Assembly (NCBI GenBank): GCA_001179505.1
Contig: CDMY01000357.1
Span: 1-64,000, forward strand
Length of the DNA stretch: 64,000 nucleotides
Origin: Vitrella brassicaformis CCMP3155
Taxonomy: Eukaryota; Protista; Chromerida
Direction: 5' to 3'
Below, piece by piece: positions 21,681-27,589 of the stretch; the first letter of the stretch is position 1, and each line of letters begins with the position of its first letter. The position numbers and the translations under genes were made by a program. The notes under the pieces were generated by a model. That model searched no databases, was not told the origin of the DNA, and saw only the letters and a list, made by a program, of their open reading frames with translations.

Positions 21681-23428
21681 TTATGATGTATATATGGCCC
21701 CTCCCTCCCCTACCCCGAGATAAGGGAGGAAGAATCTGAAGAAGAGGAAGGCGGGTCCCTGTGGCGGTGGTGATGCCGCCAGGATGGCCAGGCCGCGGCT
21801 GTCGAGTGTGTGGTTGTGCTTGAGGAGCCACGCCAGGCCACGCAGCTGCATCAACCCACACACCACCACCACATCACGAGCCTCCTTCTGCACACATACA
21901 TGTATAGCACCAGTCATATCAGATTTGGATGTGTGTGTATATGTATGTCTCGCTCACTGACTCACGTCGATTTGTGTGAGTATCTGATGGGCCATGTACA
22001 GATTGCGCTCCTGGAACAGAGCCTGAAGAAAGATAAATCAAGCAATGAGTGAATGACACATTGAAGCAATTGTGGGGCGCTGCGCAGGGGGCGGGGGCTG
22101 TCTGTGTTGACGTACAGTACGTGTATGATTCTTGGGGTGAGAGTGCTGACGAGGTCGTGCAGCTCCTGGTAGGTGATGACCCGCCGGTTGACCAGCGACA
22201 GCGGCATGTAGTTCATGAAGCTACGCCCACTCTCGTTGTCCCACATCGTAAACAGACAACGATTCTTCACCGCCTGTCAGCACACAGACAGTGGCATATT
22301 ATGACCAACACACAACAAACCTGCCTTACACAAGTATGCAGCCGCTCACTACACTGTGGGTGCTGTCGTCACCTGCTGCGTTCGGTCGACCAGAAAGAGG
22401 GACGCACCGATTTCCTTTGCAGCAATGACACTCGCATGGAACTCCCGAACCATCGTACCGCCGTGGATGGCGCGGAATACTCGCAGCTGAAGACAGGCAG
22501 GGATGTGTGTGTTGGTGCAATGGGTGGGTCGACAGCGGCTCACTCGATGGGGGACAGGCAGCTCCTTCTGCAGACAGACAGACAGACAGACAGACAGACA
22601 CCCGATCAAGCACATGCACACAGATAGATTTCAGTGTGCGTGTGTTGTGTTGTGGTTGTGTCCTGCATGCATGTGTGTGTGTATGTATACATTTTGCAGG
22701 ATGGCGTTGATGATCTCCACATAGCGGTACTTGCACAGCTGCAGACACAATCCGACCTCGTCAATGCTGCTGATTGGTTGCCCCTTTCGCCGTACCCACC
22801 TCGAGGAAGACCTGCTGTGGCTTCACTTGACGCAGATACTGACAAGCAACCAGACAGACAGACAGACAAGCTTGTGGTCGGTCGCGACTTTCCTGCCTGG
22901 TGGATCCTCTTTCACCTCGGCCGCATCCTGCAGACACACAACATGCACAAAAACAGGTTACTTTCCGGATGTCCTCATCTCAGTCAGTGTCCACGCCATG
23001 CCGACCTGTGCGCTTGCCGCTCCCTCCATCCGTTGGTGCATGAGACCGTACAGGTGCACCCGCGTCCCGTGCACATCCACAGTGATCACATGGTCATCTC
23101 GCGTCCCCGTCCACAGGAACTGACCCGTCGTAGCGGGCGCCTCCTTGGCCTCCAGATAACCACGGTTCCTCACGTCTGCTGGTGCGTGCGGCATTGCAGA
23201 GGAGCCGCCAAGGGATGAATAGCACCGGCAATGAATCAGAGAGGCTCGTCGTGAGGGAGCCGGAGCTCGTGGCGAAGAGAGATGAGGCTGCAGTGGGTGT
23301 GGTAAGTGGCAGCGCGACGCGGCGACTGCTGCGAAGCTGCTGCAGGCATTCGTGCTCGGGCGAAGTGACGCAGAAAAGCACTTTTTCCGGTAGATCCCGG
23401 ATCTTGTGGTCATGCTCCCATGCTGCAT
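21681..23428 (-). CDS. TraB/PrgY/GumN (TRABD-like) domain protein, probably mitochondrial
   Basis: VHLYGLMH, VREFHASVIAAKEIGASLFLVDR, LFQERNLYMAHQIL and VVVVCGLMQLRGL follow the TraB motif order. N-terminus is Arg/Ser-rich. An upstream in-frame ATG at 23518 is also possible. Confidence 0.7.
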
Positions 23429-23474
23429 TCTTCCTCCTCCTTCCTCCCGGTCGGTCGGTCGGTTGAGGGTTTGA

Positions 23475-23481: not shown

Positions 23482-23615
23482 TAGGAAGGTGACGTGTGAG
23501 GATCCCCCTTTCTTTCATTCAACGCTCGCGCGTGAGGATTCGTTATTCATTGCATGCAAAGAAGCTATCTATCGTTGATCGGCTAAGGTTTTGATGGCAC
23601 TCGGATGAGCAGGAG

Positions 23616-24745
23616 ATGAAGAGGCACCGCGCTGATTGGCTACGGCTGTTTATTGCAGTGGCTATGAGAGCTTCAATCACCTGCGCTTCCTTCCTCTTCT
23701 CGCCGTGCTGCCCTTCCGCATCGCCAGCGACGCCAGCGACGACGAATGAGATGGCACCGTTCCGTCGCCCAAGGCGGGCATTTGGGCGAGTAGAGCGACG
23801 AAGAAAGAGATCTCTAGCGCATATGAGAGGAGAGCGGCGCGCAGTGGGACGGAGATCTCTGCTCACAGAGTCAGCGCGTGGCGCCTTGGGTGTCGCATCG
23901 TCCCTCCTACTCAGCCCTTCTGCGGGAGCTCAGTGGCAGTTTGCGACGCCTGCACAGATGGGCGAGGCCGTCATCAAGAACACTCAACAGGTGGGCGGGG
24001 TAAGCGGGCAGAAGGGGATGGATGCAGCCACAATAGTCTGACTGGTGTGGTGTGGTTGGTGTAAGGGTGACATCGGTGGGATCATCGAGGCCATCGACAC
24101 ATTCTCCCGCAAGTCATGGATGATGAACGTCGGCGCCACAAAAGGAGGTGAGCCAGGCGGGCAGGCGTGCAATCAGGCAGACAGCGCGTTGGCTTCATTG
24201 AGTGGTGTTTCCGTTGGTCAGAGTTGTTGGAGAGGCTCTTGAAGGAGAGGCAGCCGTCGTGCGTGTTGGAGGTGGGCACCTTCTGTGGCTACTCAGCTCT
24301 CCACATGCTGCGGGCCCTACCGCAGTCAAGTCGTCTCACGACAATAGAGATCGACCCCGAAACCGCCGCCGTGGCCAGGAGCATTTTGGCGCATGCGGGC
24401 GTTGCTGACCGGATAGACCTGCGAGTTGGTGCGTCAGGGGACGTCTTGCCCAGCCTCAAAGGCCCTTTCGAGTTCATTTTCATGGACCATTGGAAGGGGG
24501 AGTATCTGAAGGACCTGCAGACGCTGGAGAGGCTCCGTCTTACCGCATCGGGAGGCACTCTGGTGTTCGACAATGTGAGATATCCGCCTGGCGGTGCGAG
24601 TGAGCTGTTGAGCTTCCTCGAGGACACATCTGATTATGACGTCGAGTTTGTGGATATCCCATTCGAGTATCGGGATGATATACCTGACGCTGTGGCTGTG
24701 GCACAGTACAAGCCGGGCAAGGGGGCGGGGGGCATACTCATGTGA
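23616..24745 (+). CDS. COMT: Catechol O-methyltransferase family protein with a tripartite (signal, transit, Tat) presequence
   Basis: IEAIDTF...WMMNVG..KG, VLEVGTFCGYSAL, TIEID, FIFMDHWKGEYLKDL and LVFDNV. Three exons. Presequence ends RRSLL...SAGA. Confidence 0.9.
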
Positions 24746-25050
24746 TGGATGGATGGAGGGGTGTTTGACGTCATTCTGACGGACCTCTGTTGATGAATCA
24801 GTCCGTCATATCTTTTCCCATGTTAACATTTCACATTGCCACACAGCGGACATCTGTCTGCATGAATGCAGCGAGTCCGTCAGGTCCACGTCGCATGCAG
24901 CCATCAGCCGCCATATATGCACACACACGGCACGGCACGGAGAGCTGCTTTTCGCAGCAGCCAAAAACTTGCTTGTCATGGATGCAAAACACTCAGCACT
25001 CACTCTACCCGATCCATCGAGCTGAATCCTCTTAGAGTCTCACAAGCTAG

Positions 25051-27589
<2,539 letters not shown>

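What the first reader, a model, noticed from the sequence alone, without database searches (positions are those of the whole stretch)
23616..23960. COMT-family methyltransferase apparently targeted to the thylakoid lumen by Tat
Seen: hydrophobic leader with TCA|SF (ASAF-like cleavage), an Arg-rich transit-like stretch, then VGRRSLL (RR at 23850-23855), a hydrophobic core GALGVASSLLLSPS and A-G-A before the mature domain. Established: signal + transit + RR/h-region/AxA is the layout of cpTat lumen proteins in complex plastids, and Tat carries folded, cofactor-loaded proteins. Inference: a SAM-dependent enzyme, or a SAM-binding non-catalytic protein, in the lumen, where SAM supply is not established.
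Basis: partly seen in the sequence, partly recalled or inferred. Interest (0 to 1): 0.72.

Follow-up and report, generated by a model that had tools for sequence, protein, structure and literature searches.

The report
Algal COMT enzyme with thylakoid-lumen leader
A Vitrella brassicaformis gene encodes a catechol-O-methyltransferase-type enzyme behind a leader whose twin-arginine segment is conserved in dozens of algal relatives, which points to methyl-transfer chemistry inside the thylakoid lumen, where none is known.

Summary
The window comes from Vitrella brassicaformis. A three-exon gene (23616-24745, + strand) encodes a 326-aa protein. Residues 1-105 are a leader and residues 106-326 are a complete COMT-type domain.

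- **Gene model:** Spliced transcript contigs confirm both introns. They start at least 110 nt upstream of the ATG at 23616, so the public 257-aa model (start at M70) is probably truncated.
- **Enzyme:** The domain matches human COMT by sequence (3.4e-42) and fold (TM 0.92). The metal, base and SAM residues are conserved.
- **Key test:** RR conservation holds. R79 and R80 are the only invariant leader residues among 10 orthologues. 46 of 50 group-A leaders and 32 of 37 leaders of a second, mostly green-algal and cryptophyte group have RR, an uncharged core and AxA directly before the mature domain. Animal, fungal-like and actinobacterial relatives do not.
- **Upstream signals:** The Chromera, Pseudopedinella and Hanusia proteins carry textbook ER signal peptides with AxA|F sites.

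Caveats:
- In Vitrella alone the pattern is weak evidence, because 13.7% of shuffled leaders show it.
- Its signal peptide is marginal.
- TAT_signal HMMs give no hit.
- I could not verify Tat machinery or localisation.

Verdict: a probable cpTat lumen passenger and a member of an apparently undescribed algal family. The scan holds only this same stretch as a prior note (s1-201801).

The parts
23486..23615 (+). 5' untranslated leader with three short upstream ORFs (ATG at 23554, 23594 and 23605; 10, 4 and 4 codons). The last one overlaps the main ATG as ATGA.
   Evidence: Transcript contigs start at 23486 (X7), 23506 (X1) and 23508 (X2). All three upstream ATGs have a pyrimidine at -3.
23616..23687 (+). 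Putative ER signal peptide, residues 1-24 (basic n-region, core LFIAVAM, T-C-A|S-F site). It is marginal.
   Evidence: Kyte-Doolittle peak 2.23 at residues 9-17. No signal-peptide predictor was available. The orthologues have clear signal peptides.
23688..23840 (+). Arg-rich, transit-peptide-like stretch, residues 25-75. It holds the alternative in-frame starts M46 (23751) and M70 (23823, the public start).
   Evidence: Low pLDDT in the model.
23841..23930 (+). Lumen-targeting-domain-like segment, residues 76-105: RR at 23850-23855, h-region 23880-23921, A-G-A 23922-23930.
   Evidence: R79 and R80 are invariant in A2. The layout is shared by orthologues.
23931..23990 (+). Start of the mature COMT-type domain (Q106 onward) to the end of exon 1.
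   Evidence: W143 lies 38 residues after Q106, as W38 does in soluble human COMT (alignment). The high-confidence fold starts at about residue 111.
23991..24065 (+). Intron 1 (75 nt, GT..AG).
   Evidence: A spliced joint is seen in contigs of X1, X2 and X7. The genomic contig of X8 runs through the donor unspliced.
24066..24147 (+). Exon 2 (includes the WMMNVG motif).
24148..24221 (+). Intron 2 (74 nt, GT..AG).
   Evidence: A spliced joint is seen in X1, X2 and X7.
24222..24745 (+). Exon 3 coding part with stop: SAM-binding motif I, the E of IEID, DHWK, DN and EYR.
   Evidence: PF01596 at 1.9e-21. 100% identity to P0001. Transcripts end at about 24755-24763.

Best explanation
The gene encodes a metal-dependent, SAM-dependent O-methyltransferase of the animal COMT type, made as a 326-aa precursor with a three-part leader.

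Proposed route (inferred):
1. Translation starts at M1 (23616), after leaky scanning past three weak upstream ATGs.
2. Residues 1-24 take the protein into the ER.
3. The Arg-rich residues 25-75 carry it across the inner plastid membranes into the stroma, where the domain folds and may bind SAM.
4. Residues 76-105 (RR, a moderately hydrophobic core, A-G-A) engage the thylakoid Tat translocase.
5. The thylakoidal processing peptidase cuts after A105 and releases a soluble 221-residue COMT-sized enzyme in the lumen.

What is shown: the gene model, the transcript extent, the fold, the active-site conservation and the conservation of the RR/h/AxA module.

What is inferred: the start codon, each transport step, cleavage, activity and substrate.

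The Vitrella protein belongs to an algal family with two groups. Group A holds chromerids, pavlovophytes, pelagophytes, a dictyochophyte and a pinguiophyte. Group B holds chlorophytes, a cryptophyte and a pelagophyte. Members of both groups share this module.
For: **Gene model and start**
- Both introns are spliced out in RNA-derived contigs, which start 110-130 nt upstream of M1.
- A 326-aa transcriptome ORF, P0256, is identical to exon 1 over residues 1-125.

**Passenger domain**
- Pfam PF01596 scores 84.9 bits against a cut-off of 22.
- Human COMT matches at 3.4e-42 over residues 13-220.
- The AF2 domain has pLDDT >90, and Foldseek ranks human COMT 3a7e first with TM 0.92 and rmsd 1.4 A.
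- D241, H242, W243, K244, D269, N270, E301 and E195 are invariant in A2.

**Leader**
- R79 and R80 are the only invariant leader residues.
- All 20 first-found algal leaders show RR + core + AxA, against a shuffle mean of 11.6%.
- 46/50 group-A leaders have RR, and all 50 have A at -1.
- 32/37 group-B leaders have the pattern.
- Only 1 of 56 non-algal relatives shows the loose pattern, and that one is a membrane anchor.
- On the tree, RR leaders are confined to groups A and B.

**Upstream signals fit each lineage**
- Chromera has ...GAHA|FSVP, Pseudopedinella ...TSA|FQ and Hanusia ...SAA|FLQP. Green-algal-type leaders have no signal peptide.

**Precedent**
- The same layout (signal peptide, transit peptide, RR domain with AxA) is the accepted Tat lumen route for cryptophyte phycoerythrin alpha subunits (PMC5784005).
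Against: - The Vitrella pattern alone is weak evidence (13.7% of shuffles).
- The putative signal-peptide core is short and interrupted by Arg. Residues 1-27 could equally form an amphipathic, mitochondrial-type helix.
- The Pfam and NCBIfam scans, which would include their TAT_signal models, gave no hit on any leader.
- The Vitrella c-region lacks the basic residue seen in many orthologues.
- Three upstream ORFs and the better-context M46 leave the start codon open.
- Some pelagophyte leaders are only 36 residues long and look mitochondrial.
- I could not confirm tatC or TatA/B in Vitrella.
- No SAM supply to the lumen is known. From general knowledge, the lumen is acidic in the light while COMT works best near neutral pH.
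Confidence: 0.6

Rival explanations
1. The RR segment is not cleaved. The protein stays anchored in the thylakoid membrane by its h-region, as Tat-inserted Rieske proteins do, or it is delivered by Sec or spontaneous insertion rather than Tat. The catalytic domain would still be in the lumen.
For: Some h-regions are fairly hydrophobic (Vitrella peak 2.13, P0314 2.47). The TAT_signal HMMs are silent. The Vitrella c-region has no Sec-avoidance basic residue.
Against: A at -1 in all 50 group-A leaders and AxA in 43 of them indicate selection for processing. Invariant RR is the Tat hallmark and is not needed for Sec.
Confidence: 0.12
2. Mitochondrial sorting. An Arg-rich presequence is followed by a hydrophobic sorting signal that is cut by the inner-membrane peptidase, or by a mitochondrial Tat-type route, which places the enzyme in the intermembrane space.
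For: The Vitrella N-terminus (basic, predicted helix 4-27) and pelagophyte leaders starting MLRS...ALARAARPP look like mitochondrial presequences. M46 has the best start context and would give a purely Arg-rich leader.
Against: The Chromera, Pseudopedinella, Hanusia and several metagenomic orthologues have uncharged, strongly hydrophobic signal peptides with aromatic +1 residues, which are typical of complex-plastid import. Group-B green-type leaders are Ser/Thr/Ala-rich like chloroplast transit peptides. From general knowledge, chromerid mitochondrial genomes are tiny and encode no tatC.
Confidence: 0.1
3. The real start is M70, as in the public model, or M46. The protein never enters the ER, and the RR/hydrophobic segment acts as an N-terminal membrane anchor or has no targeting role in Vitrella.
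For: The public annotation CEM05384.1 starts at M70. Three upstream ORFs precede M1. Animal membrane-bound COMT uses an N-terminal anchor (P0088).
Against: M1 is on every transcript contig. The upstream ATGs all have weak context, and M70 has the weakest context of the in-frame Mets. Orthologues need the upstream part to reach a plastid. The h-region contains Ser, Gly and Pro and is followed by conserved AxA, unlike an anchor.
Confidence: 0.1
4. The protein reaches the lumen but is not a working methyltransferase there. It binds SAM or a catechol-like ligand as a chaperone, sensor or single-turnover protein.
For: No SAM supply to the lumen is known, and a lumen review contains no occurrence of 'methyl'. 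From general knowledge, the COMT-family protein TOMT/LRTOMT acts in hair cells without needing catalysis.
Against: All metal, base and SAM-contact residues are invariant across divergent algae. Group B keeps DH-K, DN and EY. That pattern is what purifying selection on catalysis predicts.
Confidence: 0.2

Closest known systems
Animal catechol O-methyltransferase (soluble and membrane-bound COMT; PDB 3a7e, 4pyi, 1vid)
   Same: The fold is the same (TM 0.92, rmsd 1.4 A, 36% identity). The length after predicted cleavage is the same, with W38 in register. The metal ligands D141, D169 and N170, the base K144, E199, the SAM contacts E90 and H142/W143, and the gatekeepers W38 and P174 are all shared.
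   Different: The animal enzymes are cytosolic or held by an N-terminal anchor. The algal protein has a 105-residue, cleavable-looking three-part leader with a twin-arginine module. Its substrate is unknown.
Cryptophyte phycoerythrin alpha-subunit precursors (tripartite leader with Tat lumen-targeting domain)
   Same: The leader grammar is the same: ER signal peptide with AxA|F, transit peptide, then RR + hydrophobic core + AxA (PMC5784005).
   Different: The passenger there is a light-harvesting protein. Here it is a cosubstrate-consuming enzyme. Experimental Tat dependence exists for the cryptophyte case (cited in that paper) and none exists here.
Plant polyphenol oxidase (lumenal, Tat-imported catechol-oxidising enzyme; from general knowledge, not tested here)
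   Same: It is a catechol-acting, metal-dependent enzyme sent folded to the lumen by a twin-arginine signal, and its physiological lumen substrate is unclear.
   Different: It is an unrelated fold (type-3 copper), it uses O2 rather than SAM, and it is found in land plants.
Actinobacterial 257-262-aa COMT-like proteins (for example Nocardia O-methyltransferases)
   Same: 37-40% identity over the catalytic domain.
   Different: They have a different N-terminus (LTEIGGKRLPFLRWSF...) with no RR/h/AxA module. On the tree they sit inside the non-algal clade.

Membership tests
Cation-dependent O-methyltransferases, COMT type (Pfam PF01596 Methyltransf_3) | Profile match above the curated threshold | tested here: met
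   84.9 bits against a cut-off of 22 for P0256. 76.8 bits for exon 3 alone.
Cation-dependent O-methyltransferases, COMT type (Pfam PF01596 Methyltransf_3) | Rossmann-like class I methyltransferase fold superposable on COMT | tested here: met
   Foldseek ranks human COMT 3a7e first, E 1.8e-23, TM 0.92 by target, rmsd 1.4 A over 213 columns. Domain pLDDT is mostly >90.
Cation-dependent O-methyltransferases, COMT type (Pfam PF01596 Methyltransf_3) | Metal ligands (D141, D169, N170), catalytic Lys144, Glu199 | tested here: met
   D241, D269, N270, K244 and E301 are aligned to these residues and invariant in 10 orthologues.
Cation-dependent O-methyltransferases, COMT type (Pfam PF01596 Methyltransf_3) | SAM-binding motif I and acidic residue at the end of strand 2 | tested here: met
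   LEVGTFCGYS and the E195 of IEID are conserved.
Cation-dependent O-methyltransferases, COMT type (Pfam PF01596 Methyltransf_3) | SAM-dependent O-methylation of a catechol | not testable with these tools
   This needs recombinant protein and an assay.
Thylakoid Tat (delta-pH pathway) passengers of complex plastids | Twin arginine at the n/h boundary of a lumen-targeting domain | tested here: met
   RR is at residues 79-80. It is invariant in A2 and present in 46/50 and 32/37 relatives.
Thylakoid Tat (delta-pH pathway) passengers of complex plastids | Moderately hydrophobic uncharged core, less hydrophobic than the ER signal core | tested here: inconclusive
   An uncharged core of 14+ residues is present. 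It is less hydrophobic than the first peak in five of the six proteins profiled. In Vitrella the margin is only 2.13 against 2.23.
Thylakoid Tat (delta-pH pathway) passengers of complex plastids | AxA processing site directly before the mature domain | tested here: met
   A-G-A|Q in Vitrella. AxA in 43/50 and A at -1 in 50/50 group-A leaders. The folded domain begins a few residues later.
Thylakoid Tat (delta-pH pathway) passengers of complex plastids | Preceding ER signal peptide and transit peptide | tested here: inconclusive
   The Vitrella core is short and contains Arg, and no predictor was available. The signals are clear in the Chromera, Pseudopedinella and Hanusia orthologues.
Thylakoid Tat (delta-pH pathway) passengers of complex plastids | Match to curated twin-arginine signal profiles (the TAT_signal models of Pfam and NCBIfam) | tested here: not met
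   No hit at E up to 10 on five leaders in either library. These short bacterial models and HMMER's filters are insensitive to plastid signals.
Thylakoid Tat (delta-pH pathway) passengers of complex plastids | Tat translocase present in the organism | not tested
   Literature searches gave nothing usable and the plastid-genome paper is not held. No query sequence by reference was available.
Thylakoid Tat (delta-pH pathway) passengers of complex plastids | Import dependent on RR and on the pH gradient; lumenal location | not testable with these tools
   This needs import assays or localisation experiments.

The most novel reading that the evidence does not exclude
Many algae (chromerids, pavlovophytes, pelagophytes, dictyochophytes, cryptophytes, chlorophytes) run SAM-dependent O-methylation inside the thylakoid lumen. 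That would require an unknown thylakoid SAM/SAH carrier and an unknown lumenal catechol- or quinol-type substrate. With outgroup rooting, the RR-bearing lineages branch at the base of the whole COMT-proper family.
Probability: 0.3. Interest if true: 0.85.

Novelty: new variant of a known kind. Interest (0 to 1): 0.66.

Why it matters
From general knowledge, the known lumen enzymes are proteases, isomerases, a de-epoxidase, carbonic anhydrases and oxidases. A lumen review contains no occurrence of 'methyl' and describes even nucleotide use there as contentious.

A conserved, catalytically intact COMT-type enzyme with a Tat lumen signal in several algal lineages makes one question directly testable: does SAM enter the lumen, and what is methylated there?

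The work also corrects the public Vitrella gene model by 69 residues.

It gives a practical rule for this Arg-rich genome. A single RR-plus-hydrophobic leader is weak evidence (about 14% by chance), and conservation in orthologues is what counts.

Tried and rejected
- **TAT_signal profiles:** Pfam and NCBIfam scans of five leaders at E up to 10 gave no hit. I treat this as insensitive rather than decisive.
- **Tat machinery and localisation in the literature:** Searches for tatC or Tat in Vitrella and Chromera, for a lumenal O-methyltransferase, for SAM in the lumen and for the Chromera gene id found nothing relevant. The chromerid plastid-genome paper is not held.
- **Earlier scan notes:** These returned only unchecked first-reader notes.
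- **Bacterial promoter/terminator scan:** Irrelevant for this eukaryote.
- **Bacterial Tat signal inherited by gene transfer:** Rejected. The closest bacterial relatives have a different N-terminus and no RR module.
- **Joining exons:** Exons were searched by reference. The full-length protein was used only as the database entry P0256, which is identical to exon 1 over residues 1-125.
- **Rooting of the family tree:** It rests on a distant outgroup and is not trusted.

Full report
**Observation**

- A basic and then hydrophobic N-terminus carries T-C-A|S-F at residues 22-26.
- An Arg-rich stretch follows.
- VGRRSLL has its RR at residues 79-80 (nt 23850-23855).
- The uncharged core GALGVASSLLLSPS is residues 89-102, and A-G-A is residues 103-105.
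- An in-frame stop lies 24 nt upstream of the ATG.

**Organism and gene model**

The catalytic exon is 100% identical to a Vitrella brassicaformis CCMP3155 protein (P0001, CEM05384.1).

The gene has three exons: 23616-23990, 24066-24147 and 24222-24745.
- Contigs of three runs (X1, X2, X7) lack both introns exactly at GT..AG borders, so they derive from RNA.
- A contig of a fourth run (X8) runs unspliced through the first donor, so it is genomic.
- The spliced contigs begin at 23486, 23506 and 23508. This puts the ATG at 23616 on the mRNA, behind a 110-130 nt leader.

The leader holds three tiny upstream ORFs whose ATGs all have a pyrimidine at -3. M1 has G at -3, M46 has the best context, and M70 (the public start) has the weakest.

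A transcriptome-derived ORF of 326 aa (P0256) starts at M1 and is identical to exon 1. The public 257-aa model therefore probably lacks 69 residues. The start-codon choice remains an inference.

**The passenger**

- Exon 3 and the full protein match Pfam PF01596 well above threshold.
- P0001 aligns to human COMT at E 3.4e-42 over residues 13-220 of the soluble enzyme.
- An AlphaFold2 model built on ten orthologues has a confident domain from about residue 111 and a low-confidence leader.
- Foldseek ranks human COMT first (TM 0.92 by target, rmsd 1.4 A).
- The metal ligands, catalytic lysine, Glu199 equivalent, SAM contacts and substrate gatekeepers are present and invariant among orthologues.
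- After a cut at A105, the mature protein would have W143 at mature position 38, as in soluble COMT.

**The decisive test: orthologues**

The first word search already showed three pavlovophyte proteins with S-R-R-x-F, a weak hydrophobic core and an Ala-rich site in front of the same domain.

A profile search of 1.84 billion representatives and two further profile word searches recovered two algal groups.
- **Group A:** Vitrella, Chromera velia (Cvel_13748), Pavlovales CCMP2436, Diacronema, Phaeomonas, Pseudopedinella, Pelagomonas, Pelagophyceae CCMP2097, Chrysophaeum, an Aureococcus fragment and many marine metagenome proteins.
- **Group B:** Scenedesmus, Cymbomonas, Monoraphidium, Chlamydomonas sp. 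UWO 241, the cryptophyte Hanusia, Aureococcus and abundant marine sequences. It has DHCK in place of DHWK.

Results on the leaders:
- In a ten-sequence alignment the only invariant leader residues after M1 are R79 and R80.
- RR with an uncharged core occurs in 46 of 50 group-A leaders. One of the two scored as lacking a pair (Chrysophaeum) has RR with a short core that fell just outside the distance rule.
- A is at -1 in all 50, and AxA occurs in 43.
- In group B, 32 of 37 leaders have the pattern, and several of the rest have RR with a shorter core.
- Among 56 non-algal relatives with a leader of 25 residues or more, only one shows the loose pattern, and it is a membrane anchor.
- Shuffling each leader gives the pattern in 1-23% of trials (mean 11.6%; Vitrella 13.7%), against 20 of 20 observed.

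The single Vitrella sequence is therefore not significant by itself. The conservation across several independent lineages is.

On trees of the mature domain, RR leaders are confined to groups A and B. Group B is a clade (100/98), and the animal, fungal-like and actinobacterial sequences form a separate clade. Group A appears as a basal grade under outgroup rooting, which I do not trust.

**Lineage-appropriate upstream signals**

- Chromera (…GAHA|FSVP), Pseudopedinella (…TSA|FQ), Hanusia (…SAA|FLQP) and several metagenomic proteins have uncharged, strongly hydrophobic signal peptides. An aromatic residue follows the cleavage site, then a transit-like stretch, then the RR module.
- Many green-type group-B proteins have Ser/Thr/Ala/Arg-rich leaders without a signal peptide, followed by the RR module.
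- This is the accepted grammar for Tat lumen passengers in complex plastids, described for cryptophyte phycoerythrin alpha subunits (PMC5784005).
- For Vitrella, Phe at +1 is known to be less conserved (PMC6668581).

**Mechanism proposed**

The route is ER entry, plastid import, folding in the stroma, Tat transport and cleavage after A105. This would yield a soluble lumenal COMT-type enzyme. Every transport step is inferred.

**Weak points**

- The marginal Vitrella signal peptide could be read as a mitochondrial-type helix.
- The start codon is open.
- The TAT_signal profiles are silent.
- Some pelagophyte leaders are very short.
- Tat machinery in Vitrella is unverified.
- Biochemically, no SAM supply to the lumen is known (PMC3813922).

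**Novelty**

No paper in the library links a COMT-type or any O-methyltransferase to the lumen or to a twin-arginine signal. The Chromera gene id is unmentioned. Sources name the family members only generically.

I classify this as a new variant of a known kind: a known enzyme family and a known targeting grammar, in an unreported and physiologically puzzling combination that is conserved across algae.

- Exons were searched by reference.
- P0256 is a database protein.

Noticed in passing
window 23005-23465 (- strand): A divergent neighbouring gene. Its transcript contig ends at 23450-23465, only about 20-55 nt from the start of the COMT-like transcript (23486-23508), so the two appear to share a very short bidirectional promoter region. 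Its likely first exon (ATG at 23194, splice at 23005) has no Pfam match.
   Followed up: partly
window 24763-27000 (- strand): A convergent M17 leucyl aminopeptidase gene (PF00883) with many short introns. One RNA contig (X7) runs from the COMT-like gene straight on to 25182, so the two 3' ends abut or overlap.
   Followed up: partly
window 23554-23619: Three short upstream ORFs sit in the 5' leader. The last one ends in ATGA, overlapping the main start codon. This may indicate translational control or alternative starts (M1, M17, M46).
   Followed up: partly
window 23616-23822: The public protein model CEM05384.1 starts at M70 and omits 69 residues that are present in the transcriptome ORF P0256. 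A paper on chromerid targeting notes that such 5' truncations are common in these assemblies (PMC6668581).
   Followed up: yes
tree (P0005, P0009, P0011, P0418): Actinobacterial (Nocardia-type) COMT-like proteins nest inside the eukaryotic non-algal clade with high support. This suggests a transfer between eukaryotes and actinobacteria. The direction was not tested.
   Followed up: no
P0079 and P0080, C-termini: Two group-A proteins (Phaeomonas and a metagenomic one) share a long C-terminal extension ending in ...ANDGSGVA(L)S(S/T)Q. The others, including Vitrella, lack it.
   Followed up: no
window 22560-22640, 25590-25640: (GTCT)n/(CAGA)n microsatellites lie in introns and intergenic DNA around the gene.
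   Followed up: no
Arg-rich leaders here give a loose Tat-like pattern by chance in about 14% of shuffles, so each of those calls needs the orthologue-conservation test used here.
   Followed up: no
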